From Macrostomum hystrix (Eukaryota; Animalia; Platyhelminthes), in NCBI GenBank assembly GCA_950097015.1, contig CATNEN010000038.1, forward strand, positions 26,908,001-26,972,000: a DNA stretch of 64,000 bases, read 5' to 3'. The notes beneath the pieces were generated by a model. That model was not told the origin of the DNA. It searched no databases and was given only the letters and a program-made list of their open reading frames with translations. Below, one piece after another: positions 6,140 through 62,348 of the stretch (the first letter of the stretch is position 1; each line of letters opens with the position of its first letter). The position numbers were made by a program, and so were the translations under genes.

Positions 6140-6998
6140 ATCAGTCACCTAGAATCGTCACAAATCAGTCACCTAGAATCGTCACAAATCAGTCACCTAG
6201 AATCGTCACAAATCAGTCACCTAGAATCGTCCCAAATCAGTCAGCTAGAATCGTCACTAATCAGTCACCTAGAATCGTCCCAAATCAGTCACCTAGAATC
6301 GTCACAAATCAGTCACCTAGAATCGTACCAAATCAGTCAGCTAGAATCGTCCCAAATCAGTCACCTAGAATCGTCCCAAATCAGTCACCTAGAATCGTCC
6401 CAAATCAGTCACCTAGAATCGTCACTAATCAGTCACCTAGAATCGTCCCAAATCAGTCACCTAGAATCGTCACTAATCAGTCACCTAGAATCGTCCCAAA
6501 TCAGTCACCTAGAATCGTCACTAATCAGTCACCTAGAATCGTCCCAAATCAGTCACCTAGAATCGTCCCAAATCAGTCAGCTAGAATCGTCACTAATCAG
6601 TCACCTAGAATCGTCCCAAATCAGTCACCTAGAATCGTCACAAATCAGTCACCTAGAATCGTACCAAATCAGTCAGCTAGAATCGTCCCAAATCAGTCAC
6701 CTAGAATCGTCCCAAATCAGTCACCTAGAATCGTCCCAAATCAGTCACCTAGAATCGTCACTAATCAGTCACCTAGAATCGTCCCAAATCAGTCACCTAG
6801 AATCGTCACTAATCAGTCACCTAGAATCGTCCCAAATCAGTCACCTAGAATCGTCACTAATCAGTCACCTAGAATCGTCCCAAATCAGTCACCTAGAATC
6901 GTCACTAATCAGTCACCTAGAATCGTCCCAAATCAGTCACCTAGAATCGTCACTAATCAGTCACCTAGAATCGTCCCAAATCAGTCACCTAGAATCGT
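6140..6998. repeat. 24-bp tandem minisatellite (TCAGTCACCTAGAATCGTCCCAAA)
   Basis: Period 24 read directly. Confidence 0.97.
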
Positions 6999-13232: not shown

Positions 13233-13894
13233 CTTCGAGACGGAAAGCTGAAAATTTAGCAAGAAACAAATGTTGTTTAGTTATTTTTTATTTTGAAGAA
13301 AGCATTGGTATGAAGTTGTGAGTATCGTAACTACTTTCTCTTACTGATTAAATAAAATTAATAGCTTCTCTTCGTATTTGACTGCACGAGCGGTCACCGC
13401 GGAAACTGACTAACAATATTCCAACAAAAACTGTAAGTATTTTTCCTTAACTTATCTGAAGCTTCACCGTTAAAATTGACTACTTAATTCTTACTCAATT
13501 AGATCAACGAAGCTTGTCAATAGCGCATAATAAACACAGCCTTATTAGGACAATGTACACGCCAATTAAAAAGATAAAAAAAAAATCACTGGTTAATTTG
13601 AAAGACGTATAATGGATGAAAAACAAGCATTGATGAAAGAGCATAAGTCAAGAAAAACTGAACTGTAACAAAAAGACTGTTATTGTATTTATTGAAAAAG
13701 CACATTTTGTTTATTTTGTGTTAATAGCGAGTAATGATACATGAGTACATGATCGAAATAAAATGGCCGATAAAAATAGCACATATAATCAAGGAACAGA
13801 ACAAGAACTTCGCTCTCTGCCTCGACTCTACAATTTGGGTGTACTCTATTTTCTTTTTCTAAATGTCCCGCACGGGAAACAGACAAGCACAACG

Positions 13895-13954
13895 ACTGAA
13901 ACAAAGACTCACAGTGTAGGGCTGAAAATATATAAATAGTATGAAAGCGAAAAC
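13895..13954 (-). promoter_or_regulatory. Candidate promoter of receptor paralogue 2: IRF-E/ISRE-like GAAAGCGAAAAC, TATA-like element, Inr-like TCAGT
   Basis: GAAAGCGAAAAC at 13943-13954 (+). On the minus strand TATTTATATA at 13938-13929, then TTCAGTC near 13897. Confidence 0.4.
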
Positions 13955-16595: not shown

Positions 16596-23257
<6,662 letters not shown>

Positions 23258-35743: not shown

Positions 35744-36642
35744 ATGGCAGGAGTTCAAGATGCAATTGGAATGTTGGCCGAAGAGCTGAGAATCGATTGG
35801 AATTAGGCCCAATGAGGCATGTTAAGATTCAGAAATTTACCCCAAGCCAAGATATCAGAATTTGGCTAACCGCCTTTGACCAAAGGTGTGATTCTGAAGG
35901 AATAGAACAGGAAGAACACAGGAAGAGGGAGCTCTTAGCCAACTTAGATTTAGCCACTGCGTTTGCAGCAGTACAACGTCTTAACTTACCAGAAGACCTA
36001 ACCTACGAGGAATTTAAGGAAAGACTAGTAGAAAGATTCGGTCGTTTAGGTAGTTCAGCAGAGTTTAGAGAAGAATTTCGAGGCCGATTGCAGGGCAGAA
36101 ATGAGCAGATTGATTCGTTTTCCGATGCACTTATCGAGTTAGCAACCCGTGCTTTCCCGAATATGAATGCCGAACAACGCGAAGAAGAGGTTGTCGAGCA
36201 ATTCATCAAAGGCGCTAGAATTCCCTCAGATACTAGGGAAAAGTTGATTTTCGCCCAACCAGCCAGTCTGCAAGAGGCTAGGCGAATGTTAAGGCGCATT
36301 GAAGCCGCTTGGCAGATGTCACACAAAAGTGGACTACGAGTTGTGAGAGATGAGCCAAGTAATGACGAAGATCAGAGCAGGAAGCTGGAAGATCTGATTG
36401 AGAAGCAGAAGCTGGAAATCAGCAAACAGAAGAAGCTCATTGAGACTCTTACTCAAGAGAAGAGAAAGGCTGAAAGCCAGACACTGCCACCTCAGCCGCT
36501 CATGCAGCAGAAAGTGCATTTCCAGAAACCCTATCAGCAGTCAAGGCCTTCGCCGACCTGCTATAACTGTCGCAAAGTTGGACATATCGCGAAGAATTGC
36601 CAAAGTCCACGACAGTATCAGCGGTTCCATCAGGGAAACTGA
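35744..36642 (+). CDS. gag: Gag (capsid, coiled coil, CCHC knuckle); apparent 1-nt deletion near 35790
   Basis: CYNCRKVGHIAKNC zinc knuckle; RLQGRNEQIDSF MHR-like motif. The ATG at 35744 is one base out of frame with the main ORF. Confidence 0.9.
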
Positions 36643-36690
36643 ATATCGAGGGACGACAGTCGAGGCCACGCCCCTCCAGAAATCCCAGAT
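36633..36690 (+). promoter_or_regulatory. -1 programmed ribosomal frameshift signal (G GGA AAC plus downstream stem)
   Basis: X XXY YYZ heptamer directly before the gag TGA. Pol is in the -1 frame. GAGGGACG...CGCCCCTC can pair ~8 nt downstream. Confidence 0.85.
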
Positions 36691-39600
36691 TCGAACTTTC
36701 GGCCTCCCAGTCAAGTTGTTACCCTGTAAAGTCCCAATATTTTTATCAGACTGGGAAGCGTCATGCACTTTATGCGTCAGCACCTCGCCTATCAGTACCC
36801 TATGCGTCAGCACCTCGCGTATCAGCACCCTATGCGTCAGCACCCCGCGTAACAGCACCTATTGCGTCAGCACCCATTGTGTCAGCATCTATGTCAGCAT
36901 CTACCGTGTCAGCACTCGACGAGTCAGTGGAAGAGGATCTAGCATCCGAGGAGCCGGAGCCAGTTACAAGGACTCTCGTTGGAAAGTGCAACAAGAAGAC
37001 TCAAAGGACAAGTAAGAAAATCTTTGTTTCCAATTCTAAACTAGAATTAGTTAAGCCGGAAGGATATGAAGCTGTAGTAATAGGGACTATTCAAAAGCAG
37101 GAAGTAGACTTTATCCTAGATACAGGAGCCAGAAATTGCTTCTTAAGTAAATCTGTGTGGACTAAACTGATCAAGCCCGATCAGATCAAGAGCACTGATA
37201 AGAGAGTATCTACCTTTGATGGTACCAGAGTTCAGTTGGAAGGAGAAAGCTGCATTATTGTCCGTTTTGGTGACATCCAAATGGAAGTCGATTTCTTGCT
37301 ATGCAGTCACGAATGTGATAACATACTGGGAATGGAGTTCTTCATTGGATACTGTGAGAGCATTAACATCTCCAAGGGAATGTTAATACTCCATGAAGGA
37401 TCTTGTATCCCTATGCAGTTTACTCACCTCCCAGTGAAAGTTTGCCGCGTTTACACGCAAGAAAGGGCTGTGATCCCAGCCAACAGCGCACTGAGAATCC
37501 CCGTGCGATTAGCCAAGAATGCGGAATGTAACTTCGGTACCCCAATGACTATTGAAGTGATCGGAGATGGCGTAAGAGCCAAAGAGTTGACATTAGACAT
37601 GGTCCCAACTCTTGTCACCATGAAGGAAGGTTCCGCTATCGTTGAGATCATAAACCATCATCCTGTTGATGTGAAACTGGCAAAGTCAGCCCTGATTGGC
37701 TTAGCCAAACCCATGAAAGCCAAGGAGTTGAATTACTTCGAAGAACAGTCAGAACCCGAAGCCACTGTGAAAGTAAATCAGACCCAAACGATTGAGAATG
37801 CGTGGATTGAGGAGGTCAGCATTGGACCAGATCTCTCCGAAGATCAGAGAAAATCGGTAATCGATTTGATGAAGGAACACCGCGAAGCATTCTCCCAGCA
37901 TGAACTAGACATGGGTCTAACTCATCTAGTCACACATGAAATCTCTCTGAAAGATGAGACACCTGTTCGAATCCCTACGAGAAGGATTCCTCCCCATCTT
38001 CAGAAACAGGTTGACGCGCAGCTGGATGATATGCTAGCCAAGAACTTAATCCGACCTTGCTATTCAACTTATTCCACCCCATTAGTAATAGTGCCAAAGA
38101 AGGACGGAACGATTAGAATAGTTAGCGATTTCAGAGTGTTAAATTTTCGAGTTAATTACGTGCCATATCCGTTACCTAATATTCATCAAACTTTTTCTTA
38201 TCTATCAGGAAGCCAATATTTTAGCAGTTTAGATTTGAATTCCGGATACTGGCAAGTACCCATTAAGGAAGAGCATAAATTTATGACCGCATTTTCCACA
38301 CTAACTAGAGGCCAATTTGAATATGAAGTAATGGCCCAAGGTCTATCTAATGCTCCAGGCACTTTTCAGCGTTTAATGAACCTAGTTTTATTAGGAATCC
38401 AGCACAAATTTGCGATGTCATATATTGACGATATTGTCACCTATTCGAAAAATTTTGCCGATCATCTGGCACATTTAAAGGAAGTATTCCAAAGGCTAAT
38501 TACAGCAGGCTTGAAGCTAAGACCGAAGAAATGTAATTTGTTCCATCGAGAGTTAAAATATCTTGGTCACGTGATTAGTACGGAAGGAATCCGCACAGAT
38601 GAGTCCAAGATAGAGGCTATTAGAACTTGGCCGAAGCCGAAGGATGTAAAAGAGTTGAGAAGCTTTCTCGGTCTGTGCAATTATTATAGCCGTTTTGTGA
38701 AAAATTATGCCGAAGTAGCACACCTCTTATTCCAACTTACCCGGAAAAATGTGCAGAATTTCCGTGATAAATGGAGCGTGTTGCACGATCAGGCATTTGA
38801 GGCTTTGAAGACCCGAATGATGTCTACGGAAGTGCTAGCATACCCGGAATTTGTGGATGACGAAAAAGTACGGATGGTGTTGGATACGGATGCCAGTGAT
38901 GGACGAATTGGGGCCTGTCTAGGCCAGATTCAGTCAGATGGCGTGGAAAGACCCATCGCGTATTTTAGTCGCGCCATGAAAGAATCCGAAAAGAAGTACC
39001 CCATCACCCGAAAGGAACTGTTAGCCTTAGTAGATGCCATGAAACATTTTCGATTTTACCTGCTAGGAAAGAGATTCTTAGCCAGAACAGATCATAAGGC
39101 AATCATTTGGCTTTTGAGACAAACAGAAGCACAAGGTATCTTAGGAAGATGGATAGAAAGACTAAACGAGTTTCAATTTGACATTGAACATCGGAAGGGC
39201 AGTTCCCACCAGAATGCCGATAGTCTATCTAGAAGACCCGCCGAAGAGATGGAAGAAGTCGGAGAGCCCGCGGAAGGGAGAGACAGCGTGTGTGCAGAAG
39301 CTGGTCAGAAGGCAAGGACCAAGGACAGTGCTGAGTGCCTGACCCGGTCGCCAACTGTCCCAACTGAAGGAGAAATCCCGACCCCAGATCCCAACTGTCG
39401 GATCGAGTCACAGATTTCAGGAATTGAGAAGGGAGAAGAACAACGTGTTCAATGTGATTCCTGCAACTCGCAATTGAATCCGAGCGCAGAGGTATTCTAC
39501 CCTAATTCAGAGAATGAGACGCGAGGATTAAGAGAGAGCAGATGTGATAAGCTTTTGACAGACTATTTGCCCACCCCGCTTAAGCGCGAGCAAATTTTAG

Positions 39601-41363
39601 AAGCCCAACGTGCAGACCCCGCGATCCAAACCCTAAGGGAATGGAAGCGCGAAGGCCTAGCCAAACCCCCATTGCCGAGTGACGCAAGCCCCGAATTGAA
39701 GCAATTGAGTAAGTCATTTGAAGCCATGAGCATTGAGAAGGAGTTGTTAGTAATCAAGGAAGAGGGTGAATGGAAAATTGTTTTGCCCAAGTCCGTGGAC
39801 AAGCTAGCATTTAACGATCTACATGAGAGCCCGCTAGCAGGACACCTGGGTAGAGACAAAACCATTCAAAGGATGAAGCAGAGATTCTGGAGACCTGGAT
39901 TGGTCACTTCAATTGAAGGATTGATTGCCCAGTGTATCCCCTGCCTTGAGAGTAAGAAAGGTCATTACATCCAAGCCCCTATTCAGTCATTTCCAGTCAA
40001 TGAGCCGTTTTTCCGTCTTCACATTGATCTAATTGGACCCGTATCTAAGGAGAGTAGGAGAGGGCACCGGTATGTGTTAACTGTAGTAGACAGCACTACC
40101 AAATATCCCTTCGCTTTCCCGGTCCGTAACCAAAAATCAGACACCGTAATAAAATTACTGCAGGAGAGAGTATTTTCAGAATATGGCCAATGTCATTGGA
40201 TCCATACAGATAATGGAAAAACTTTCACCAGCAAGCAATTTAAAGCGTTCTGCGATCTGTACAATGTCAAGCACACTTTTACAACCCCCTATCATGCCCA
40301 AAGCAACGGTTTAGTGGAACGATTCAATAAGCAGATTAAGTCGATCATCACTTGCTTGATTGAAAAGGACCACAATGACTGGGATCTGATGATTCCCGCC
40401 GCTTTGGTAGCTGTGCGCACAAGTGTGAATAAGACCACTGGTTACAGTCCCCATTTCCTGTTATTTGGGAGAGAGGCTGTATTGCCGATTGACAACCAGA
40501 TCAAAGAATCCAAGTCCTTTGCCGATTACCCGTCCTATGTTGCCAATCATGCCGAAAGATTGAGGATAGCAGGCGAAATAGTCAAGAGGAAGTTAGAGAA
40601 AGTAGTTACTCAGCGAGAAGAAGAGGCCAAGAACAGTAAGCTGCCAAGAGAGATTCCAGTAGGCAGTTTAGCCTTAATTAACAATCCGCAGTTAGATAGC
40701 GAAGAATCTCATAAATTCCATCGCAAGAAGAGATCCGCTTATAGAGTGTTAGAACAATTTTCAGATGTAGTGTTCAAAGTTCAGAAGGAAGAAGGAGGTG
40801 AATTGACAGGCAATATCCTATTAGTGCATAGGGACAATCTGACTCTAGTGCCGAATTCTAGCAAGGAAGCAATCATTAAGGGAAGCCACCCCAGCGCCGC
40901 GAACAAAGAGAAGGTAGTAGACAAGAAAAAGAAGGAAGGACAATCAGTTAAGGGAAGCCACCCGAGGAGGAAAACCGAAGAGAAGCAGATAAATCTATCT
41001 GACTCCGAATCGGAAGACGAAGAGAGACTCCTGTGGCATTGTGACAGTAGGAGCGAAGATCATGAAATCAGAGGAAGCATGTTGGATATTGGAGCCGAAG
41101 TGGAGGTGGATGATGTAAGTTGTCAGTCGGACAATGAAAACATCGAAGAAGAAGGAGAAGGCGAAAGTGCGAACGAGAGCGAAAGTCCCGAGAGTATTAG
41201 CGAGGAATCTGACACCTCAGCCTTAGACCCGGCATGTGAAGACGAGACAATAGCTCCGCATTCCTACAACACGCGAAAATGTGTTAAGCCCCCAGCCAGA
41301 TTCAATGATTATTTGAAAAGACTAACCACAGCGATTACGTGGTTCGGCAGCATAAAATTCTAA
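36639..41363 (+). CDS. pol: Pol: aspartic protease, RT, RNase H, integrase, acidic tail (expressed by frameshift)
   Basis: LDTGA; LDLNSGYWQ; YIDD; TDASD; H-x6-H...CxxC; IDLIGP, TDNG, NGLVER. Uninterrupted ORF. Confidence 0.97.
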   Translation: MNIEGRQSRPRPSRNPRFELSASQSSCYPVKSQYFYQTGKRHALYASAPRLSVPYASAPRVSAPYASAPRVTAPIASAPIVSASMSASTVSALDESVEEDLASEEPEPVTRTLVGKCNKKTQRTSKKIFVSNSKLELVKPEGYEAVVIGTIQKQEVDFILDTGARNCFLSKSVWTKLIKPDQIKSTDKRVSTFDGTRVQLEGESCIIVRFGDIQMEVDFLLCSHECDNILGMEFFIGYCESINISKGMLILHEGSCIPMQFTHLPVKVCRVYTQERAVIPANSALRIPVRLAKNAECNFGTPMTIEVIGDGVRAKELTLDMVPTLVTMKEGSAIVEIINHHPVDVKLAKSALIGLAKPMKAKELNYFEEQSEPEATVKVNQTQTIENAWIEEVSIGPDLSEDQRKSVIDLMKEHREAFSQHELDMGLTHLVTHEISLKDETPVRIPTRRIPPHLQKQVDAQLDDMLAKNLIRPCYSTYSTPLVIVPKKDGTIRIVSDFRVLNFRVNYVPYPLPNIHQTFSYLSGSQYFSSLDLNSGYWQVPIKEEHKFMTAFSTLTRGQFEYEVMAQGLSNAPGTFQRLMNLVLLGIQHKFAMSYIDDIVTYSKNFADHLAHLKEVFQRLITAGLKLRPKKCNLFHRELKYLGHVISTEGIRTDESKIEAIRTWPKPKDVKELRSFLGLCNYYSRFVKNYAEVAHLLFQLTRKNVQNFRDKWSVLHDQAFEALKTRMMSTEVLAYPEFVDDEKVRMVLDTDASDGRIGACLGQIQSDGVERPIAYFSRAMKESEKKYPITRKELLALVDAMKHFRFYLLGKRFLARTDHKAIIWLLRQTEAQGILGRWIERLNEFQFDIEHRKGSSHQNADSLSRRPAEEMEEVGEPAEGRDSVCAEAGQKARTKDSAECLTRSPTVPTEGEIPTPDPNCRIESQISGIEKGEEQRVQCDSCNSQLNPSAEVFYPNSENETRGLRESRCDKLLTDYLPTPLKREQILEAQRADPAIQTLREWKREGLAKPPLPSDASPELKQLSKSFEAMSIEKELLVIKEEGEWKIVLPKSVDKLAFNDLHESPLAGHLGRDKTIQRMKQRFWRPGLVTSIEGLIAQCIPCLESKKGHYIQAPIQSFPVNEPFFRLHIDLIGPVSKESRRGHRYVLTVVDSTTKYPFAFPVRNQKSDTVIKLLQERVFSEYGQCHWIHTDNGKTFTSKQFKAFCDLYNVKHTFTTPYHAQSNGLVERFNKQIKSIITCLIEKDHNDWDLMIPAALVAVRTSVNKTTGYSPHFLLFGREAVLPIDNQIKESKSFADYPSYVANHAERLRIAGEIVKRKLEKVVTQREEEAKNSKLPREIPVGSLALINNPQLDSEESHKFHRKKRSAYRVLEQFSDVVFKVQKEEGGELTGNILLVHRDNLTLVPNSSKEAIIKGSHPSAANKEKVVDKKKKEGQSVKGSHPRRKTEEKQINLSDSESEDEERLLWHCDSRSEDHEIRGSMLDIGAEVEVDDVSCQSDNENIEEEGEGESANESESPESISEESDTSALDPACEDETIAPHSYNTRKCVKPPARFNDYLKRLTTAITWFGSIKF

Positions 41364-41429
41364 AAGCAAACAAGTCGTTGCGTAATTGGAGGAAGAAAAG
41401 GCTACACAATAGACATAAGGGAATTTGAG

Positions 41430-41560
41430 CCAACCAATAGGAATCGTTTTAGGGGAGTAAATTAGTCAAGCCATCATTGGTCGGTCACCGAGGAAAGTAA
41501 AAATCTGTGTTAGCCAATAAAATGTGGGGTGGGACCCCTGTTTCTCACCTATATATAGAA
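41430..41560 (+). promoter_or_regulatory. Internal Pol II promoter for ORF3 (three CCAAT boxes, GC-box-like GGGGTGGG, TATA)
   Basis: CCAAT 41434, ATTGG 41476, CCAAT 41514, TATATATAG 41550. The TATA context is conserved in the 31.0 kb relic. Confidence 0.6.
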
Positions 41561-41632
41561 GACCCCTGGGAGCAGGAAAGGAGCAATTAAAAAGCTAAAG
41601 ACACTGAGATTGTACAAACAATTTTCCGTGAC

Positions 41633-42739
41633 ATGGAAATGGATAAGTTTAACGATCAGGAATTTGACGAACTCCTGGCAGCGATTACGGTCGACTTGCC
41701 ATCAGTGAGTTCGGAGAGCGCGAGTCCAACGGAGACTAACTCCGCCAAGGCAGAACCGCCTGTGGAAAATCAGCCTGAAGCTCCGCTGCGACAGCGCACT
41801 GAGCCAAGCTTGGCTGGCAGCCGAGGTCAAGCACGTACTGTGGTGAAGAGGCCGGCCGCTAAGACCGTCGAGTCGGTTCCGTCTAAGAAGATGCAGCCCA
41901 CAGTATCTAGACTGCCAGTCCCGGCGTATCCAGCGGCTCGAGAGAATGTCTTGAAGGCGCAAGTGGCATCCGCTGTGGTTGTACCCGCCACTACTCTAGC
42001 TCGTCACCCGCCGAATGCAAGAACATCCATTGTTCTCGCTGCATCAGAAAACAATCCTGTCAAGAAGCCAGGTCCTCGACCTATTGCTCCGAGGCTGCCA
42101 CCACAGCCAGTGCAGCAGCAGCCGCAGCCGTTGATGCAGCAGCCGGTGGTGCCGCCCAAGCGGCCGACGTTGCACAAAATGCGGACCCCGTTTCAACGGC
42201 TTGGGCAACAACATCCTCAGCAGCCTCAGCAGCCGCAGCAGCCGCCGCCGCTGCAGCAACAGCAGCAGCCGCCGCCGCCGCAGCAGCAGCAGCAGCCGTC
42301 GCCGCCGCAGCAACAACAGCCGTCCGCGTCAGCTTCGCCGCAGCCTGAACCTCAGGTAACTGGTGACCAGCCACCTGAAGATGGACCCGGAGGTGACTTC
42401 CCGGCCGTCATCGGAACCCTGCCTGAGGCTAGGCAGGAACACTACAAACGGTTGGTACAATTGATCAAGAAGTATTTACTGACAATCGCGTATGCAAGGC
42501 TGGACAGGACGCTTCCGCAGCGTGAAAGAGTCCGTCCGGTCCTGCGAGTATTGAATACGGAGTTCGGTGAGCTCTATGCTATCGCCGCCTGGCGCCGTGC
42601 GATCCAATACGCTAAGCACTCCATCACAAGTAATCCATATGACTTTAATCGCGTACTTTTAAATATTGAGGTCAGATGGGCTGGCAATGTAGTTGGTTGG
42701 CCACGCCATCAATCTATTCCTATGTCAGCTCAATTTTAA
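41633..42739 (+). CDS. Gypsy accessory ORF3 (acidic N-terminus, P/Q-rich linker, conserved ~100-aa C-terminal domain); not env
   Basis: 368-aa ORF between pol and PPT. No signal peptide or TM. Homologue at 31.1-31.8 kb. Confidence 0.8.
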   Translation: MEMDKFNDQEFDELLAAITVDLPSVSSESASPTETNSAKAEPPVENQPEAPLRQRTEPSLAGSRGQARTVVKRPAAKTVESVPSKKMQPTVSRLPVPAYPAARENVLKAQVASAVVVPATTLARHPPNARTSIVLAASENNPVKKPGPRPIAPRLPPQPVQQQPQPLMQQPVVPPKRPTLHKMRTPFQRLGQQHPQQPQQPQQPPPLQQQQQPPPPQQQQQPSPPQQQQPSASASPQPEPQVTGDQPPEDGPGGDFPAVIGTLPEARQEHYKRLVQLIKKYLLTIAYARLDRTLPQRERVRPVLRVLNTEFGELYAIAAWRRAIQYAKHSITSNPYDFNRVLLNIEVRWAGNVVGWPRHQSIPMSAQF

Positions 42740-53011: not shown

Positions 53012-56000
53012 TTAAGTTCGCCAGCGCCGCAGACTCGCGAGTGCCTCCTTCTCGTCGATACATTTCCAAGCTGGCGGCAGCCCGTTGACTGGCTTCTCGT
53101 AATAATTACTGAGATCCGTTGCAAAGCTTGCACAGAACCACATCCAAAACTTGTTGCCGCAGTTGCTTGGGTCAGGCCGAATGTCCCAATCGTAGAAAAA
53201 ATCTTTGTACTTGGCGTAAGAATGTCGTTTCTTATACCATTCGCCATCAGTGGCACAATTTGGAGTAAGTCTTCCATATATGTGGCACACAATGCAATAA
53301 AATTCATGGTTTTGACTCACATCGAGTTCACAGTTTCTAAAGACAAGCTCCAGGGTGTGTTCATAGTGCGTCCCTCTGACTCCCTGTGGTCTGTGCTGCA
53401 GGCAGACATGAGGCGTGCCTTCTCTTTCATAGTGCTTAGCATCATCTTTGCAACATGGCTCAAAACAGAAAGGACACTGTGCTCGGCAGCCCCAGAAACT
53501 ATTTAACACCATTCGGCAAAGGGTTTCTCCTTGAGAAACAGAATCAATGTCTCTGGCTTCCAAAATTCGATATTCTTGTTGAAGTTCCATATGAGCCTTC
53601 TTGATGGCTGCACGAAAAAAGCCAGTAAAATCGGCAAGTGTTATCGAACTTACATATTTATAATCGGCACTGAAAACATTCTCCAAGTCTTGCGGCACCA
53701 CAGCAAGCTCAGTTTCAACATTTTTGCAGAACTTGGCAATCCATAGGCTAAAAGACTGAGCGGAGTCCGTGTTGGCTTTTTCATCAGCGTCATGAACAGC
53801 AGCGAATATAGGTTCAATAAGTTCATAGTTTATAGCTGAAAACAGCCTGGTAGTATCGTTAGAGGACTGTTTTTTAGATAGAAATCCTAAAATAAAACTC
53901 TTCAACCACTGAAGAGCAGCTGTCTCGGAGTTTGAGGCGAAATCTATAATTTTCTCAAATTCGCGATTTTTTGCGAACTCTTCCAACATTCGCACTACGA
54001 GATAAAACTTGCCATTGCCAATTTCCTTGATCAATTTAGACTTAAGCTTCTCCTTCATTCGCTGACCAATAGCGTCCCGGATGATTTTTTTCAGATGATC
54101 CCTGACATAATCTGCTGCTACAGCGGCACAGCTTTGCCGCTTCACCATGTTAGCAAATGTGTTGCGAATCCGTTCCTTGATCTGATTGGTCCTTGACATT
54201 ATGCTGCAACTTTCGTGAAATCGATTGTCCAGTTCAACAAAATAAGGATAAGCGAGACTAAGCGACAGAATTACCAATTTTATTTCAAATTTCATCGTTA
54301 TTCTCGTGTCCTGATAGACGCTAAGTTCTCTCTGCAGACACTCAGTAACACATTTTTGAACTTTATAAGCATCGTTTTCTTCAAACCATCTATTCGCATG
54401 AGAAATGTCGATAACTAAAATCTGCACATTTCTGATAATTTTATTGCTGATTGAAGTTAAACAATCTTGTGCTTTCTTTCGCATCTTTTGTTCAAAATAG
54501 TGCTTTTCCTCTCCAAAAGTTAATAGCTTTAATGCTCCATCACGAATTCGTGTGGAAAGTGTCACGTCGATTTCGAAAAGAGTGTTTTCATCGGCTTCAA
54601 AGAGTTGTTCACGAGTCAGCGTAGCAGCAGAGCGTACTGCCCTGATGTCTTCATCAAAAGCAATTCGATCCATATAAGAACGAACGGTAGATATTTCTTT
54701 AGGATAACAATTGCGGAGAAATCTCTCGATCTTTGAATAGACAGAGTCACCTTTCTCAGATCCTTCTGCTGGTAAATCAGCGGTAAATTTACTCCACAGG
54801 CTGCCAAACTTTTGTTCAATAACTTCTGGAGGGCATCCCTCAGGCATCTCCTCAGCAGCTCTTTTGGCTTCGAGTAGAATTTCCCTCTCCCACTCGCTTT
54901 GCTTTGACATCTGCTCCGTTTCCAACAGCTGAAAGTCGCAAAGTAGGTCCAGTTTTTTTCTGATCTCGCAACCAACCGACCTAAGATATTCTGTTAAAGA
55001 GTTGGTTTTGCCGGACTTCCACTGAATTGTGTGTTCACTATATGGGTTCTGCTCAAAGAATCTCTCTAGCCGCTGTTTTCCTGATTCTTCACACTCGTCG
55101 ATAAGTCTGTTTAACTCTTTGATTAGAGCCAGTTTTTCTCTGTTCAATATGTCTGTCGCGGTCGATTTTTTTACCCGAACCGACGCATTCTTCGTCAGCC
55201 ATTCATGTAACTGTGCATCAAACAGTGTCTTAATTTCAAAGAACTCAGATTCCAAAATATTGTAGGCCTTCATTTCCACACTGTTACGAAAACTGAAAAC
55301 AAAGTCCTCAGTCATTATGGCCTTCCAAAGATCTTCAATGCAAAGAGCGAAGTCATCGAATCTACGAAAGCTTTTCGGCTCGTTATCCAGACAGTGCAGA
55401 ATGTGGCTTTTGATTTTACGGATGCTAAAAGAGTATCCAGGGTTAACGGGAGCCATCGGAGGGTCTCCTTGCCACAGATCCGACGCGTAAAAAATGTCAT
55501 TATGACAATCAAATGATATAATGTCTGAGAAACAATCGATATTTAGCAGCTTCTCTCCTTCAGCTGCCTCTCTTGTAATGTTATCAAGGACTTCCTGCAT
55601 CTTAAAGTTTGCGTCCATCATTTTTTCCTTCGCACCCACCGCTGGCACATTCTGATGCACAAAGATGCACTTCCGCCGCAGGTCACGCATGCTGTTCGCC
55701 ATCTTCATCCTGATAAACGCGTGAACCACAATCTGCAGTATATCCATAATTTCAGCCGTGTTTTCACCCTTGAGATTGATCACCGTCACGTCGCCCAGGC
55801 CAACAACAAGTGTGGCAAGCTCGTTGTCATGGTGATGCTTGTCGAGTCCCAGCTCAGGTGCTCTGAGTCCCTCCGTGTCGATCACGGCCACAAAGTCGAA
55901 CGGCCTTCCGGGCTCGACGGGAACCAGCTGAAGAAAAGCTCCTCGGGTGCAGCGACCAGCGCTCACTGCGAACTTCAAGCCGAACATTGTGTTGAGCAGA

Positions 56001-58372
56001 GTGGACTTGCCCGAGCTCTGCAACCCGAGCACAGAGACCGCAAAGATCTTCTTTGGCCCCACAATCTGCTGGCAGTGGCTGAGAACTGAGGTCACCCATG
56101 TCAGTGGGATGTTGCTGGCGTCTCCGTCAAGAATCTCCAGGGGGATTCCCCAGAGCAGCAGGCGGGCAAAAACTTCTGGTAGAGACGAAAAAGTATTTAC
56201 TGAAATTTCTGACGACATTCTGAAAGCGAATGTAGCTTCAAAACATTGGCAGATTTCTCGGAAAACATTTTCTAGACCAATTGATGCTCCAACTATTTTC
56301 GTCTCGATTTCCTGAAGCGTGAAATAAAGATTCTGTCTCTTCTCAATCAAATCTTTAATTTGACTTTTTGATTCATCAGTTGTTCGACCGATTTTTATTT
56401 CACCACACGTTATTTGAAGTGAGCTTCGAATTTTATTTCTTCTAGTGTGCAATTCGGGTAAAGTTTTTCTGGAGATTTCGTCAAGGTGCAGTTTAATCCA
56501 TTGCAGAAACAGTTTAACTGCCAGTCCATCCTCAGATTTAGCATGGCTCTCCAGTGACTTCTTAAGGTCTTTGAGAAATAGACTCATCGATTTGCACTTG
56601 GCAAATTGTGCTTCTCTCTGCTTAGCTTTTTTAGATTGGACTTCTAGCAGCTCACCCTTCTCAGCTTTCGAAGAGTGTTCTTGTCGGTGCAACTGGCTAA
56701 ACTTGAGCCAGAGTTCCTGCAGCGGAAGATGCTTAGCTTTGAACTCCAAAACATTTGAAGCAGTGATGTGCTTAACCACTTGAAGACTAGAATACTTCCC
56801 CATGGCTAGTGTCGCCCCACTCTCATCAGTGCTGAAGGTGTCGTTCCGAGTTTCCTCTGCAAGCATCTTTCCAGGTGTCTTTAACAACTGACCTTCCAGT
56901 TTTTTCGAGACATCACTAACTAGCTGGGTTTTGTTTTTCTTATTCGAGCCTTTGTAAGCCAGAACCACTTCCGAGCGTTCTCGGAGCGACTTTAGAACGG
57001 TTTCGCTCGATTTCTCTTTGCCTTTTCCGCTTTTGTTGTAGAGCACAATTAGAACATGAATTTGACGACTATTAAGATTCTCAATGGTCTGGACAACTTC
57101 TTGGCTTTGAAGAGCCTTGTTTTCAACTAGAAGGACAATAATTTGCGCTTTTTGGGCCACAATGTCCGTCTCCTTTTTATGCTGCATAATATCACCTCTG
57201 AAATTTGCAATCACAAAGGCTCTGCTGAAGGAACTCAACTGGCCCTTCGATGGTAGGAAAATTGTAGCCTCGACTAGGCCATTCGTGCACTGGCGTCTCG
57301 CGGTACCATTGCTGCAGTCTCGGTGGAAGAAAGTGTCCTGGCTGTTCTTGGACAGAAGACTGTTCAGCAGTTTCGACTTGGATGAGCCGATCTCTCCGAT
57401 TCGAGCGAAGCAGACAACCGGAAATGGATGCTCGGACACCAAGCTCGTCTCCACGTGCAGGCCCTCAGAGTCTCGAAAGTCGACCACAATGTCTCTGAGG
57501 TTCCACTGGCTCAGTGTGAGGCGGCCCTCGCAATCTCTGTAGATGAGCGGAAACGCCAGTTTGCAGGCGAACAGGGCCTTGCACAGGATCTGCTGCACCT
57601 CCGGGTCGCAGCAAAGAAAGCACGCTTGCAGCACGTCCATGGGATGCAGGACATCTGAATCATCCGTGTCCTCCTCGCCTGAGGAGTCTTGATCTTCCTG
57701 GTCATCTGCGTTTTGTGTTGATATTTCCCTAGCGGATTTGTCGTACGCCAGTATTCCTTTGAGAACAGTCCAAGCTAGAGCATCAATTTGCGGACTTCGC
57801 GCTCTCTTTGACTCGTCGAAATCCTCTTCACGGAGTCTCACAATGTCTGAGAATGAGATCTTATTCGGAAAGTAGCCCTCTAGTTCCAAATTTTTAACAA
57901 CTTGAATAACAGCTGCGTTGGCGCCATGACTGAAAGGGTTAAGACATGTTGCACCTTCACCTGGTTCTGTGTCTTCTTCCGAGTGTTCACTATGGTTCTT
58001 ATTTTCTTCGTCTTTGTCTGTGTTGCTATGTACATATTCTCTTGCACTATTCTGATCAACTGGAGTTGCGACGCTTGACTGTGAGTCGGGATCTTCAATG
58101 TGGTACAGCCTTAAATTCAAATTTGCTGCTTCTAATCGCAGCATCTCTCTCCAGCTATCAATAAAAGCGTGAAATTCTGGAATTTCATGCGATGCCATGC
58201 TTTCGATACAGACCTCATCGAGTCTGTTTATATCCTGCTGCAGTAATAGGGCCACATCCACCAAGCCGAAGCGACGCATTACACACAGAATTGTCAGGGT
58301 CCATTTCTCCTCGTCGAGGTGTGGCGCCAGTTGACGCAGCAGCTGTCGGATCTCGGTAGCTATAGGCTCCAT
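53012..58372 (-). CDS. Very large inducible GTPase (GVIN1/URG4-URGCP family), 1786 aa, single coding exon
   Basis: G1 GLQSSGKSTLLN, FAVSAGRCTRG, G3 DTEGLRAPE, HDNELATLVVGLG; also HPMD...F.C, SKSKLLN...FFHR, GCRAQCPFC...C...H, HRPQG, W.I.PD...FW.WF motifs of VLIG proteins. Confidence 0.95.
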   Translation of the reverse strand: MEPIATEIRQLLRQLAPHLDEEKWTLTILCVMRRFGLVDVALLLQQDINRLDEVCIESMASHEIPEFHAFIDSWREMLRLEAANLNLRLYHIEDPDSQSSVATPVDQNSAREYVHSNTDKDEENKNHSEHSEEDTEPGEGATCLNPFSHGANAAVIQVVKNLELEGYFPNKISFSDIVRLREEDFDESKRARSPQIDALAWTVLKGILAYDKSAREISTQNADDQEDQDSSGEEDTDDSDVLHPMDVLQACFLCCDPEVQQILCKALFACKLAFPLIYRDCEGRLTLSQWNLRDIVVDFRDSEGLHVETSLVSEHPFPVVCFARIGEIGSSKSKLLNSLLSKNSQDTFFHRDCSNGTARRQCTNGLVEATIFLPSKGQLSSFSRAFVIANFRGDIMQHKKETDIVAQKAQIIVLLVENKALQSQEVVQTIENLNSRQIHVLIVLYNKSGKGKEKSSETVLKSLRERSEVVLAYKGSNKKNKTQLVSDVSKKLEGQLLKTPGKMLAEETRNDTFSTDESGATLAMGKYSSLQVVKHITASNVLEFKAKHLPLQELWLKFSQLHRQEHSSKAEKGELLEVQSKKAKQREAQFAKCKSMSLFLKDLKKSLESHAKSEDGLAVKLFLQWIKLHLDEISRKTLPELHTRRNKIRSSLQITCGEIKIGRTTDESKSQIKDLIEKRQNLYFTLQEIETKIVGASIGLENVFREICQCFEATFAFRMSSEISVNTFSSLPEVFARLLLWGIPLEILDGDASNIPLTWVTSVLSHCQQIVGPKKIFAVSVLGLQSSGKSTLLNTMFGLKFAVSAGRCTRGAFLQLVPVEPGRPFDFVAVIDTEGLRAPELGLDKHHHDNELATLVVGLGDVTVINLKGENTAEIMDILQIVVHAFIRMKMANSMRDLRRKCIFVHQNVPAVGAKEKMMDANFKMQEVLDNITREAAEGEKLLNIDCFSDIISFDCHNDIFYASDLWQGDPPMAPVNPGYSFSIRKIKSHILHCLDNEPKSFRRFDDFALCIEDLWKAIMTEDFVFSFRNSVEMKAYNILESEFFEIKTLFDAQLHEWLTKNASVRVKKSTATDILNREKLALIKELNRLIDECEESGKQRLERFFEQNPYSEHTIQWKSGKTNSLTEYLRSVGCEIRKKLDLLCDFQLLETEQMSKQSEWEREILLEAKRAAEEMPEGCPPEVIEQKFGSLWSKFTADLPAEGSEKGDSVYSKIERFLRNCYPKEISTVRSYMDRIAFDEDIRAVRSAATLTREQLFEADENTLFEIDVTLSTRIRDGALKLLTFGEEKHYFEQKMRKKAQDCLTSISNKIIRNVQILVIDISHANRWFEENDAYKVQKCVTECLQRELSVYQDTRITMKFEIKLVILSLSLAYPYFVELDNRFHESCSIMSRTNQIKERIRNTFANMVKRQSCAAVAADYVRDHLKKIIRDAIGQRMKEKLKSKLIKEIGNGKFYLVVRMLEEFAKNREFEKIIDFASNSETAALQWLKSFILGFLSKKQSSNDTTRLFSAINYELIEPIFAAVHDADEKANTDSAQSFSLWIAKFCKNVETELAVVPQDLENVFSADYKYVSSITLADFTGFFRAAIKKAHMELQQEYRILEARDIDSVSQGETLCRMVLNSFWGCRAQCPFCFEPCCKDDAKHYEREGTPHVCLQHRPQGVRGTHYEHTLELVFRNCELDVSQNHEFYCIVCHIYGRLTPNCATDGEWYKKRHSYAKYKDFFYDWDIRPDPSNCGNKFWMWFCASFATDLSNYYEKPVNGLPPAWKCIDEKEALASLRRWRT

Positions 58373-59160
58373 CAGCTGCTCGTCTGAAAGGCAAGAAATT
58401 TTAATTACAGTGGTAGTATTTTTACTATATGTTATTTGTCTCTCTACCGCGCTATATAAGAGATATATATATATTATATATCTCGTAGAACCGCACCTTC
58501 TTGATAAAAATCAATCGGATCTGTATAAAAAGTGCACAATGCTACTTAAATAAGTCTAATATTTTATTATGGGCGAGAAGGAAAACGGGATCAATAAAAG
58601 TACAACGAACAGGGAACTATCTATTTTTAGAAACAAAAGCTGGTCGCTACAGGCCTTCCTAAATACTAAGTGAAAGAAAATAGAAGTAGCTGATTCTCAT
58701 TAGTTATATGGTTATATAATAATTATAATCTCGTGTATATAAATTTAACCTTAATAAGTTTATGCAACGTACATGCAAGTATTGAAGTCATGTCCAAAAT
58801 AAATGTTTATAATAAAAGTTATAAGTCGATAAGTTGTCATGTTTAAAAGTTAGGAAGTAGTTTCATAGACTATTATAGTAAAGTCTTCCTAATCTAATTA
58901 GTTAAAGAAGATTTTGAAAAAAAAACTAAATAGTGCTACACTTCTTACCGGTATAATATAGACTTAACAGTACCGTAGTCCCAATAATAACTAGGTAGCA
59001 ATGGCTTAACCAATGACCACTATAGGAGTCTACTCCAACTTGGGCTTAACATTGAAATTTTAATATCAAGCGTACATGGCATAGGCAGTAGTTAAAAACG
59101 TATGAAAAAGTTTTATTAAGTTCAATCAACTACAATAAATCGAGTCTCTTATTCACTTAC

Positions 59161-59372
59161 CCAGCTGAATGGGACACACCCAGCAGAACGGTAATCGATG
59201 GAGTGAATCTGAGGATTTTAATATTTAAATTAATTATTACTTTATTCAGTTTCACAGATTTTCTTTGCTTTTGGAAAACAAATAAAAGCAACAAAAGAAC
59301 TGGAGGAGAGGCGAGATAGTTTTATTTATATTGGAAACATTGGTCGAAAGCGAAAACCGAAAAACGAAAACT
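59161..59372 (-). promoter_or_regulatory. GVIN promoter and non-coding exon 1: ISRE/IRF-E-like GAAA array (59346-59372), TATA (59330-59323), Inr-like (~59301), donor at 59160
   Basis: GAAAGCGAAAACCGAAAAACGAAAACT; minus-strand TATAAATA ~30 nt before TCCAGTT; donor CTGG|GTAAGT; acceptor TTTCAG|ACGAGCAGCTGATG at 58384. Confidence 0.65.
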
Positions 59373-60461
59373 CATTGACGAAATGTCAAATTTATAGTTT
59401 TTTGTTGTAAAATGCAATAGTAGTTAACCTTTTGGATACTGAATGGTTTATACGTTTTAACTAGTCACCTAAAAATAAAAGAGCATCAATATTTGTTATA
59501 GTATAAAAAGCGTGACTTTTAAAATTCAAAATACGATATAATTTAGGGTAATTAATAATTGATCTGCAGGATTGTATATAAGGATACGGGTTAAAAATTC
59601 CAATATTCTATACTTTGACGTGCGTTTCAATTAGTTAAAAGTCTAATTTGTTCATTGATATTATCGTAATAAAAAAGCGATTATAAGTTTTTTATATTGT
59701 TGCGTGTTGAAATGTGAAATAAGAATGGTCGAGCCGCAGATAAGGAGATTGATAAGTTAAATATGAAAATTAGTTTAAGATAAGGATATGAGTGTTAAAA
59801 TAAGAGATATGCACTGAAAAGTGTAAGAGAAATGCAGTTGTAGCGGTATTCCTAAACCATGCTAAGATTGCCTATAGCTACCACTCGTGCAATCTAGACG
59901 CTACCAGATCGTGTATATACCAAATTAAACGCTACCATTAGATTGTTAGATCCGTGAAAGATAAGTATCGCGGAGTATCAAGAGTTAAACGGCCATTTTC
60001 AGGACCATCAGCCTAAAGGATAATAAAATACATACAGAACTAACAGAGAAAGAACGAGTAAGATCGACCTGAGTTATAATACGCTGCCAAGAGAGAGAAA
60101 AATTATTTCCGTTAAATTTAATATAGTCTGCTACTGTTACCTGCAGCAGTTTTTTATTTCTTTGAGTATATATAATACGAGTACTAGCGAAGATTCGTGT
60201 TTTAAATATGTATCAATTACTAGAAACACAGTTTTTTTCAACTTTCTCGGCTTAGTGTCATCGTTAAATCTTAATAGATGAATCTGTTAATAATTGCGAA
60301 TCATTTATTTACTGGTGCTCGACTTAATATAGTTATAATTTTTAATAACCCAAACGGACTTGGCAAAAACGACATAAAAAATGTAAATTGCCCATCACTG
60401 TCGATCCGAAGCTGCTGCTCTTGCAACTTCAGCACCGCTAGACTGCTCTACAGTGAAATCT

Positions 60462-61203
60462 ATGATGAGCGGACTGGCAGCGCTGCTGTGCCTTCTGAGC
60501 ATCCTGCAGGTGCCGTCAGTACAGGCTCAGTGCCCAACACCGTTTAAATTCTAGGCTGACAGGTGCGTGTATTTCAACACTGCGCATAGCTTCACCTGGT
60601 GCTCGGCTAACAGGCAGTGTGAGTTGATCGGAGGTGAGCTCATCAACTCGTACAGCTCGCTGAAGCTGCTTTCCAGCTTCTCGAGTGCGAGCTGCGGCTG
60701 CAAACTATGGGTCGGAGTGAGTGATTCGGCTGATGAGAGAGTTGAGGACCGAACTGGATGGCAACGGGTGAACTCGAACGGCATTCTGCCGCTGGACAAC
60801 TCCCTGTGGTTCCCCAGCATGCCGAACAACAATGGATATCAGGACTGCTTGTCTAACTCAAATGTCAACATCAGTAAGCTGATCGACACCTGGTGTTCCA
60901 ACACGAGGGGCTTCATTTGTGAATTTCGGAATTCAACTTCGGAGAGCCGACCTCTGAAGAGCTCGCTCTGGCAGCGGGCTGCCTTCAAGCGCACCAGCTA
61001 CAATCCCAGCACTGAGTACTGCTACTCAGACGTGCAGCTCCAGCTCCTTCCAGTGCGTTGCTGCAGCCATGCGCTCCGGTGGCAGCTGCAGACACGTGCT
61101 GTACAACCGCAAGCTGAAATTGTGCCGCCTGCTGCAGTTCACCGACGCTCAGGTCGAGGAGGAGATCGAGACCAGCGCTGACTGGGTGAAGTTCAGCTTC
61201 TGA
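60462..61203 (+). pseudogene. C-type lectin-PAN copy 2, disrupted
   Basis: Different signal peptide MMSGLAALLCLLSILQVPSVQA. In-frame TAG at 60552. 5-bp deletion near 61038 relative to copy 1. Confidence 0.85.
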
Positions 61204-61649: not shown

Positions 61650-62348
61650 CTACAAGTTCGCAGTTTGGACAAACGAACATGGCAGGCGACACAGTTTCAG
61701 CTTGCGGTTGTACAGCACGTGTCTGCAGCTGCCACCGGAGCGCATGGCTGCAGCAACGCACTGGAAGGAGCTAGACACCTGCTGCACGTCTGAATAGCAG
61801 TACTCAGTGCTGGGATTGTAGCTGGTGCGCTTGAAGGCAGCCCGCTGCCAGAGCGAGCTCTTCAGAGGTCGGCTCTCCGAAGTTGAATTCCGAAATTCAC
61901 AAATGAAGCCCCTCGTGTTGGAACACCAGGTGTCGATCAGCTTACTGATGTTGACATTTGAGTTAGACAAGCAGTCCTGATATCCATTGTTGTTCGGCAT
62001 GCTGGGGAACCACAGGGAGTTGTCCAGCGGCAGAATGCCGTTCGAGTTCACCCGTTGCCATCCAGTTCGGTCCTCAACTCTCTCATCAGCCGAATCACTC
62101 ACTCCGACCCATAGTTTGCAGCCGCAGCTCGCACTCGAGAAGCTGGAAAGCAGCTTCAGCGAGCTGTACGAGTTGATGAGCTCACCTCCGATCGACTCAC
62201 ACTGCCTGTTAGCCGAGCACCAGGTGAAGCTATGCGCCGTGTTGAAATACACGCACCTGCCAGCCTCGAGGTTGAACGGCGTTGGGCACTGAGCCTGCAC
62301 TGACAGCAGCTGAATGACTAGAGGCAGAAACACGAAACTTAGCAGCAT
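61650..62348 (-). CDS. C-type lectin-PAN copy 3, inverted, C-terminus replaced after RKLKLCRL
   Basis: Near identical to copy 1, including the proximal promoter, until the junction at ~61682. Confidence 0.8.
   Translation of the reverse strand: MLLSFVFLPLVIQLLSVQAQCPTPFNLEAGRCVYFNTAHSFTWCSANRQCESIGGELINSYSSLKLLSSFSSASCGCKLWVGVSDSADERVEDRTGWQRVNSNGILPLDNSLWFPSMPNNNGYQDCLSNSNVNISKLIDTWCSNTRGFICEFRNSTSESRPLKSSLWQRAAFKRTSYNPSTEYCYSDVQQVSSSFQCVAAAMRSGGSCRHVLYNRKLKLCRLPCSFVQTANL

What the first reader, a model, noticed from the sequence alone, without database searches (positions are those of the whole stretch)
59295..59372. ISRE/IRF-type element-TATA-Inr promoter driving a GVIN-family GTPase in an invertebrate
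Seen: four GAAA cores (GAAAGCGAAAACCGAAAAACGAAAACT) lie 15-42 nt upstream of a TATA box. The TATA is ~30 nt from an Inr-like sequence, followed by a non-coding exon that can splice onto the single-exon GVIN CDS. Known: GAAANNGAAA is the IRF/ISRE consensus, vertebrate GVIN1 is interferon/IRF-inducible, and interferons are vertebrate-specific. Inference: an interferon-independent IRF-to-GVIN circuit, i.e. an ISG-style promoter in an animal without interferon.
Basis: partly seen in the sequence, partly recalled or inferred. Interest (0 to 1): 0.85.

Follow-up and report, generated by a model that had tools for sequence, protein, structure and literature searches.

The report
IRF-site promoter of flatworm giant GTPase
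A cluster of interferon-regulatory-factor-type DNA motifs sits just upstream of the RNA-confirmed start of a giant immune-type GTPase gene in what looks like a flatworm, giving a testable but not conceptually new example of interferon-style gene control in an animal without interferon.

Summary
Four GAAA cores (59345-59372), with a fifth at 59380-59383, lie 15-42 nt upstream of TATAAATA (59330-59323).

Spliced transcript contigs from three runs confirm a non-coding exon 1 ending at 59161 and a 777-nt GT..AG intron. Exon 2 starts at 58383, 11 nt before the ATG of a 1786-aa URGCP/GVIN GTPase. The contigs' 5' ends are at 59305 and 59315.

Support for the interpretation:
- A four-core cluster is expected 0.002 times per window.
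- The genome, whose closest relative is Macrostomum, has at least four IRF genes with an intact recognition helix.
- One of four other GVIN paralogues has the same IRF-site/TATA/non-coding-exon/intron layout in otherwise unalignable sequence.

Against it:
- The canonical ISRE consensus is not met.
- The element also reads as a weak heptamer microrepeat.
- Site-plus-TATA arrangements are not enriched genome-wide.
- Three paralogues lack a clear site.
- IRF binding and induction are untested.

Interferon-independent IRF circuits are already known in shrimp, oyster and sea anemone. I class this as a new member of a known kind. The scan noted an ISRE cluster at an Mx gene and mini-IRF genes elsewhere in this genome.

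The parts
59390..59396 (-). Upstream second TATAAAT; role unknown
   Evidence: Sequence. No transcript contig reaches it.
59375..59389 (.). Palindrome TTGAC-GAAAT-GTCAA holding a TGACG half-CRE and a fifth GAAA core (59380-59383)
   Evidence: A CGTCA also adjoins the GAAA run in the paralogue promoter L015.
59345..59372 (-). Tandem IRF-type element, CGAAAGCGAAAACCGAAAAACGAAAACT on the plus strand. It has four GAAA cores and three overlapping AANNGAAA sites. The first 12 nt match GAAASSGAAANY.
   Evidence: TRF reads it as period 7, score 36. The surrounding 600 nt are single-copy in the genome.
59339..59343 (-). CCAAT box; a second CCAAT at 59334-59330 overlaps the TATA box
59323..59330 (-). 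TATA box, TATAAATA
59297..59315 (-). Transcription start zone. Transcript contig 5' ends fall at 59315 (X3) and 59305 (X4, X5).
   Evidence: table 8. Contigs cannot fix a start site.
59161..59315 (-). Non-coding exon 1 (145-155 nt as seen in contigs), no ATG
58384..59160 (-). Intron 1, 777 nt, GT..AG
   Evidence: Joint 58383/59161 in one contig of each of the three runs
53012..58383 (-). Exon 2 as far as the stop codon: 11 nt of 5' UTR, ATG at 58372, then an uninterrupted 1786-aa URGCP/GVIN-type GTPase CDS (P-loop GLQSSGKS at residue 783), stop at 53012-53014. The 3' UTR continues beyond 53012.
   Evidence: The contigs are colinear over 54500-58383, the part that was laid.

Best explanation
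This is the proximal promoter of a giant VLIG/GVIN-type GTPase gene in a macrostomid-like flatworm.

Proposed mechanism: a run of four to five direct GAAA cores, 30-67 nt upstream of the observed transcript 5' ends, serves as a multimeric IRF-binding element of the IRF-E / PRD-I type. It is read by one or more of the genome's small IRF1/2-like factors, which consist of a DNA-binding domain plus a short acidic tail. Together with the CCAAT and TATA boxes it drives a transcript made of a non-coding exon 1 spliced to a single coding exon. Because no IRF association domain was found, activation would depend on IRF abundance, as with IRF1, rather than on IRF3-style phosphorylation. RIG-I-like receptors are possible upstream sensors.

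Shown here: the motif, its position, the splice, the transcript boundary, the gene family, the IRF genes and the recurrence in one paralogue.

Inferred: IRF binding, inducibility and the upstream pathway.
For: - Motif rarity: the only cluster of 3 or more cores in 64 kb; a four-core cluster is expected 0.002 times per window.
- Location: spliced contigs in three runs place the transcript 5' boundary at 59305-59315, 8-18 nt past the TATA box.
- Gene identity: URGCP_GTPase 5.6e-113. [quoted passage not shown] The best is Macrostomum lignano at 65% identity.
- IRF genes: PF00605 over its cut-off at five loci. Exons align to the IRF1/IRF2 DNA-binding domains in the PDB. Recognition helices FRCALN, LRCALM, FRCALR and LRCAIN are present. 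The tails are acidic.
- Paralogue at C35 (L015): AACCGAAACT, then GAAACCGAAAAT 11 nt before TATATAA, then a non-coding exon, a 760-nt intron and an ATG 15 nt after the acceptor. The flanks are not alignable and the motif is in the opposite orientation.
- No NF-kB, GAS, HSE or AP-1 consensus in 59290-60100.
- RIG-I C-terminal domain at two loci.
- Oyster IRFs activate mammalian ISRE reporters (PMC5557890). IRF motifs and TATA boxes mark poly(I:C)-induced genes in Nematostella (PMC8476169).
Against: - The strict ISRE consensus GAAANNGAAACT is not met; two of the three core pairs have 3-nt spacers.
- TRF describes the element as a weak heptamer microrepeat.
- Comparable CGAAA triplets are no more common genome-wide than the reversed control once one minisatellite is removed.
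- GAAASSGAAA followed by TATA: 85 hits against 100 in the control. The ten sampled hits with the longest downstream reading frames gave no immune-type domain; the two with clear matches lay inside Pecanex and SMAD genes.
- Of the other four paralogues, one (L013) has only ambiguous sites and two (L014, L016) have none in the region searched.
- No such site within 1.5 kb of the IRF genes.
- The gene is transcribed in all three runs, whose conditions are unknown, so expression may be constitutive.
- There are no binding or induction data.
Confidence: 0.5

Rival explanations
1. The GAAA run is a slippage-born heptamer microrepeat in an AT-rich promoter with no IRF function. The gene is driven constitutively by the CCAAT and TATA boxes.
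For: - TRF reads it as period 7, 3.6 copies, 83% matches.
- The genome holds dozens of similar imperfect CGAAA repeats and a similar number of reversed-control hits.
- There is no genome-wide excess of site-plus-TATA arrangements.
- Transcripts are present in all three runs.
- Three paralogues lack a clear site.
Against: - At about one such locus per 4 Mb, landing within 70 nt of a start site of one of five GVIN genes is improbable, of the order of 1e-4.
- A second paralogue has an independent IRF-3-type site at the same promoter position, in unalignable sequence and in the opposite orientation.
- The identical 12-mer GAAAGCGAAAAC recurs next to a TATA-like box at 13943.
Confidence: 0.3
2. The GAAA run is a real regulatory element read by a factor other than an activating IRF. 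Candidates are a PRDM1/Blimp-like or IRF2-like repressor, or a bZIP partner on the adjoining TGACG palindrome. It would then set tissue-specific or basal expression rather than immune induction.
For: - A TGACG/CGTCA half-site lies 3-6 nt from the GAAA run in both GVIN promoters.
- The best PDB matches of the flatworm IRF exons include IRF2, a repressor in vertebrates.
- Basal transcription is seen.
Against: - No PRDM1 core (AGTGAAAG), HSE, GAS or EICE consensus is present.
- The cores are direct repeats, which rules out a heat-shock element.
- The IRF tails are strongly acidic, as in activators.
Confidence: 0.15

Closest known systems
Vertebrate ISRE / IRF-E / PRD-I elements in promoters of interferon-inducible GTPase genes (GVIN1/VLIG-1, GBPs, Mx)
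   Same: Tandem GAAA cores satisfying AANNGAAA. The first 12 nt fit the IRF-3-type consensus GAAA(C/G)(C/G)GAAAN(T/C), which I recall from Lin et al. 2000 and did not re-read here. The position is promoter-proximal, the element works in either orientation, and the target is a member of the same giant GTPase family. Human GVIN1 is IFN-gamma-inducible (bioRxiv 10.1101/2025.03.24.645074).
   Different: No interferon is known in flatworms, and no STAT DNA-binding domain was detected. The strict GAAANNGAAACT consensus is absent. The spacings are 2, 3 and 3 nt. The IRFs here lack an association domain, so an ISGF3-type complex is unlikely.
Interferon-independent IRF circuits of invertebrates (shrimp IRF-Vago, PMC4602278; oyster RLR/MAVS-IRF and cGAS/STING-TBK1-IRF, PMC5557890 and PMC8218723; Nematostella poly(I:C) response, PMC8476169)
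   Same: An animal without interferon that has IRFs, RIG-I-like receptors and ISG-like effector genes. IRF-type motifs and TATA boxes occur in effector promoters.
   Different: Those systems have functional data (reporters, RNAi, induction); this one is sequence and transcript structure only. The taxon is a flatworm, a group in which planarians have only a diverged IRF and no cGAS/STING (PMC13563047). A native invertebrate GVIN promoter with such a site was not found in the papers searched.
IRF1-type regulation (DNA-binding domain plus acidic activation domain, controlled by abundance)
   Same: The flatworm IRFs are a two-exon DNA-binding domain followed by a short acidic tail. Their best structural-sequence matches are IRF1 and IRF2.
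   Different: They are much shorter. One recognition-helix position that is Asn in IRF1 is Arg or Met in two copies. Orthology to IRF1 was not tested.

Membership tests
ISRE / IRF-binding element | Two or more GAAA cores forming AANNGAAA sites in tandem | tested here: met
   Three overlapping AANNGAAA sites and four cores in 28 nt
ISRE / IRF-binding element | Canonical ISRE consensus GAAANNGAAACT | tested here: not met
   No exact match in 59290-60100 or anywhere in the window. The nearest is GAAAAACGAAAACT, with one extra base in the spacer and one before CT.
ISRE / IRF-binding element | Lies in the proximal promoter of the regulated gene | tested here: met
   30-67 nt upstream of the transcript contig 5' ends
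ISRE / IRF-binding element | Bound by an IRF protein and confers IRF- or stimulus-dependent transcription | not testable with these tools
   Needs EMSA or DAP-seq, a reporter, RNAi and a challenge experiment
ISRE / IRF-binding element | Recurs upstream of co-regulated genes | tested here: inconclusive
   Present in 1 of the 4 other GVIN paralogues, ambiguous in one and absent in two. There is no genome-wide excess. A possible Mx-like case on C1 is known by coordinates only.
GVIN / VLIG (URGCP-like) giant GTPases | VLIG-type G domain plus URGCP helical domain in a protein of more than 1500 aa | tested here: met
IRF transcription factors (in the same genome) | IRF DNA-binding domain with recognition helix | tested here: met
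   PF00605 over its cut-off at five loci; PDB IRF1/IRF2 alignments; RCAL-type helices in four genes.
IRF transcription factors (in the same genome) | IRF association domain (IRF3-9 type) | tested here: not met
   PF10401 gave no match in the six-frame search, and the open frames end in short acidic tails. A negative on a divergent, intron-split domain is weak evidence.
TATA-Inr core promoter | Transcription starts at the Inr A, about 30 nt after the TATA box | tested here: inconclusive
   Contig ends at 59305 and 59315 lie 4-14 nt upstream of the Inr A at 59301, that is 15-25 nt from the first T of the TATA box. Contigs cannot define a start site.
Heat-shock element | Alternating inverted nGAAn units | tested here: not met
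   All cores are direct repeats, and there is no GAANNTTCNNGAA

The most novel reading that the evidence does not exclude
A basal flatworm keeps an interferon-less, ISG-style regulon. Small IRF1-like factors made of a DNA-binding domain plus an acidic tail, downstream of RIG-I-like receptors, would switch on dynamin-superfamily defence GTPases (two GVIN paralogues and perhaps an Mx-like gene) through promoter-proximal GAAA multimers. The cis-regulatory link between IRFs and 'interferon-inducible' GTPases would then predate interferon and date at least to the bilaterian ancestor.
Probability: 0.3. Interest if true: 0.6.

Novelty: new member of a known kind. Interest (0 to 1): 0.4.

Why it matters
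Planarians appear to have lost much of the nucleic-acid-sensing and IRF axis (PMC13563047), and nothing was found in the literature on IRF targets in any flatworm. If real, this promoter would be a compact native IRF-responsive element of about 100 nt. Macrostomum is a genus in which, to my knowledge, RNAi and transgenesis are established. The element could therefore serve as an immune reporter. It would also allow a direct test of whether the pairing of IRFs with giant defence GTPases is older than interferon. The concept itself is already established in shrimp, oyster and sea anemone, so the gain is one of taxon and of a concrete cis-element, not of principle.

Tried and rejected
Most genome-wide hits, and the Mx lead, could therefore not be read.
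- Genome-wide enrichment:
  - CGAAA x3: 101 hits against 63 in the control, but about 35 come from one minisatellite.
  - GAAASSGAAA followed by TATA: 85 against 100.
  - GAAANNGAAANNGAAA: 474 against 375, inflated by a dispersed (GAAAGT)n repeat.
  - None of these gives a clear excess.
- Downstream ORFs of ten sampled site-plus-TATA hits: the clear matches were Pecanex and SMAD exons, one was a sub-threshold 7TM match, and seven had no Pfam match. None was immune-type.
- Motif near the IRF genes themselves: none.
- TE origin of the promoter: rejected, as it is single-copy.
- Heat-shock element, GAS, NF-kB, AP-1, EICE and PRDM1 readings: no consensus present.
- Trans-spliced leader: rejected. 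The contigs are colinear with the genome from their first base.
- The bacterial promoter scan is irrelevant for a eukaryote.
- STAT domain and IAD searches were negative but weak. The STING ligand-binding domain was borderline at 25.6 bits.
- IRF exons were searched one by one by reference. The joined spliced protein was not built or searched.

Full report
**What is there.**

The finding lies on the minus strand. Reading the gene strand from 59400 downwards:

- a TATAAAT at 59396-59390
- a palindrome TTGAC-GAAAT-GTCAA at 59375-59389, holding a TGACG half-site and one GAAA core
- CCAAT at 59343-59339
- TATAAATA at 59330-59323
- an Inr-like CCAGTTC with its A at 59301

Only the first core pair has the classical 2-nt spacer. 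The other two pairs have 3-nt spacers. All three pairs satisfy AANNGAAA, and the first 12 nt fit GAAASSGAAANY. The strict ISRE consensus GAAANNGAAACT is not matched anywhere in the window.

**Is it more than chance?**

Single GAAANNGAAA sites are not enriched in the window: 8 found against 5.3 expected. The window has only one place with three or more cores at 2-3-nt spacing. A first-order Markov model of the window's composition gives 0.002 four-core clusters per 64 kb and about 7 per genome.

There is a caveat. TRF reads the run as a weak heptamer repeat, score 36. Real genomic background is also richer in such imperfect repeats than a Markov model predicts. A CGAAA-triplet pattern hits 101 places, about 35 of them in one minisatellite, against 63 for the reversed control. 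The empirical density is therefore roughly one locus per 4 Mb. Even so, landing within 70 nt of the start of one of five GVIN genes is unlikely by chance.

**The gene and its transcript.**

The ORF 58372-53012 encodes 1786 aa. It matches Pfam URGCP_GTPase at 5.6e-113 and URGCP at 1.7e-54, and has the P-loop GLQSSGKS. [quoted passage not shown] The best is a Macrostomum lignano protein at 65% identity. The 220-Mb genome is therefore most likely a macrostomid flatworm.

Four runs holding 79% of the query words were found, and three of them were laid. That share matches the exonic fraction of the stretch queried. Each of the three has one contig that skips 58384-59160 exactly (777 nt, GT..AG on the gene strand). 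Each contig is colinear from 58383 down through the CDS and begins at 59315, 59305 and 59305 respectively, with no extra 5' letters.

This shows three things:

- The non-coding exon 1, its splice onto the coding exon and the absence of a trans-spliced leader are real.
- The 5' UTR has no ATG.
- The transcript boundary is 8-18 nt past the TATA box.

The promoter is therefore here. The paralogue promoter described below also has its Inr-like TCAG only 19 nt after the TATA box, so a short TATA-to-start spacing may be normal in this animal.

**Are there IRFs?**

Yes. PF00605 matches above its cut-off at C3:15.42 Mb, C38:22.01 Mb, a tandem pair at C24:2.987 and 2.990 Mb, and C38:30.986 Mb. Searched exon by exon, the C38:30.986 Mb exons align to the IRF1 and IRF2 DNA-binding domains in the PDB. 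Four genes carry a second exon with a recognition helix: FRCALN, LRCALM, FRCALR and LRCAIN. The open frames then run into short acidic tails and a stop.

No IRF association domain was found. The factors therefore look IRF1-like, regulated by abundance, rather than IRF3-like.

On other pathway components:

- A RIG-I C-terminal domain is present at two loci.
- A STING ligand-binding domain is borderline at 25.6 bits.
- No STAT DNA-binding domain was detected.

Negatives from six-frame searches are weak evidence.

**Do paralogues share the element?**

The genome has five URGCP-type genes.

- **C35 paralogue (L015).** It has AACCGAAACT at 6156-6165, GAAACCGAAAAT at 6182-6193, CGTCA at 6195-6199 and TATATAA at 6204-6210. 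A non-coding exon follows, ending at a G|GTAAGT donor, then a 760-nt intron and an ATG 15 nt after the acceptor. This is the same architecture as in the window. The two promoters do not align otherwise, and the motif is in the opposite orientation. That argues for selection on the element rather than simple inheritance of a duplicated block.
- **C38b paralogue (L013).** It has only ambiguous sites: an inverted AACTGAAA pair in a likely intron, and a CGAAA pair near a TATA-like box.
- **C39 and C34 paralogues.** Nothing clear.

**Is there a wider regulon?**

I found no statistical sign of one. GAAASSGAAA followed by TATA gives 85 hits against 100 in the control. I scanned the ten sampled hits with the longest downstream reading frames. 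One lay in a Pecanex exon, one in a SMAD exon, one gave a sub-threshold 7TM match, and seven had no Pfam match. The IRF genes have no such site within 1.5 kb. The promoter is single-copy and not TE-borne.

Two local hints remain.

- The identical 12-mer GAAAGCGAAAAC recurs at 13943 next to a TATA-like box. It lies about 700 nt upstream of a small Cys-rich ORF that has the same acceptor-then-ATG layout.
- A GAAA triplet at C1:8567129 lies about 450 nt upstream of a minus-strand dynamin N-terminal exon. This may be the Mx lead noted earlier by the scan.

**Comparison with what is known.**

The element works like a vertebrate IRF-E/PRD-I multimer, and the target belongs to the family of IFN-inducible giant GTPases. 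Human GVIN1 is IFN-gamma-inducible and coats Burkholderia (bioRxiv 10.1101/2025.03.24.645074).

Interferon-independent IRF circuits in invertebrates are already published:

- Shrimp IRF activates Vago (PMC4602278).
- Oyster IRFs respond to poly(I:C) and drive mammalian ISRE and IFN-beta reporters (PMC5557890).
- Oyster has a cGAS/STING-TBK1-IRF axis (PMC8218723).
- Promoters of poly(I:C)-induced genes in Nematostella carry IRF and STAT motifs, and TATA boxes were also reported (PMC8476169).

In flatworms the axis is essentially unexplored. Planarians have only a diverged IRF3/4-like gene and lack cGAS and STING (PMC13563047). The only paper in the library that holds both 'Macrostomum' and 'interferon regulatory factor' does not address the question.

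**Verdict.**

The IRF reading is plausible at about 0.5, but it rests on motif, position, one paralogue and the presence of IRFs, not on binding or induction. The main rival is a fortuitous microrepeat in a constitutive TATA/CCAAT promoter, at about 0.3.

I class the finding as a new member of a known kind, with moderate interest.

**Limits.**

- Only one read-laying run was allowed, so the paralogue promoters and the 13.9-kb element have no RNA check.
- No eukaryotic relative's genome could be fetched for footprinting.

Noticed in passing
window 13928-13954 (promoter-like) and 12723-13249 (ORF), minus strand: GAAAGCGAAAAC, the same 12-mer as in the GVIN promoter, is followed on the minus strand 4 nt later by TATTTATATA. 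About 700 nt downstream an acceptor (..ttttcag|CTTTCC) precedes ATG 13232 of a 170-aa ORF. The ORF has a signal-peptide-like start, nine Cys and a hydrophobic C-terminus, and no Pfam hit. It may be a second IRF-site/TATA/non-coding-exon gene.
   Followed up: partly
window 19228-19237: A third GAAAGCGAAA (ACGAAAGCGAAACAG) with no TATA box nearby. Its context was not worked out.
   Followed up: no
G000 C1:8567129-8567144 and C1:8566541-8566678: GAAAAAGAAAACGAAA lies about 450 nt upstream of a minus-strand exon matching Dynamin_N positions 1-47. The sequence could not be fetched.
   Followed up: partly
G000 contig C1, many places (e.g. 8279584, 8340147, 8360446, 19396338): GAAAGTGAAAGTGAAA, the classical IRF-1 hexamer repeat, occurs at least 20 times on one contig. 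It is probably part of a dispersed repeat family carrying IRF-type sites.
   Followed up: no
L003/L004 (G000 C24:2985025-2991357), L005/L006 (C38:30984418-30987892), L002: The IRF genes are small. The DNA-binding domain is split over two exons and followed by a short acidic tail (30-130 aa). No IRF association domain was found anywhere in the genome. Two of the genes form a tandem pair about 3 kb apart.
   Followed up: partly
window 59375-59389 and L015 6195-6199: A TGACG/CGTCA half-CRE sits 3-6 nt from the GAAA run in both GVIN promoters, in the window as part of a perfect 5+5 palindrome. This could be a composite IRF-bZIP module, as in the IFN-beta enhancer.
   Followed up: no
window 60567-61181 (+) and 61650-62348 (-): Two ORFs with sub-threshold C-type lectin matches (about 20 bits) lie just upstream of the GVIN promoter, which hints at an immune-gene neighbourhood.
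   Followed up: no
window 35797-42739: A Ty3/Gypsy-type retrotransposon: gag zinc knuckle, then protease-RT-RNaseH-integrase in a 1588-aa ORF, then an unassigned 368-aa ORF. It was already noted by the scan.
   Followed up: no
window 22226-23257 (-): An ORF with a PARG helical-domain match (8.2e-25).
   Followed up: no
L015 6640-6720: A tRNA-like, SINE-type sequence inside intron 1 of the C35 GVIN paralogue.
   Followed up: no
L016 4920-5100 and 5280-5450: Two inverted minisatellite arrays (CGATTCCCGATTCGC units and their complement) flank about 180 nt, some 600-1100 nt upstream of the C34 GVIN paralogue.
   Followed up: no
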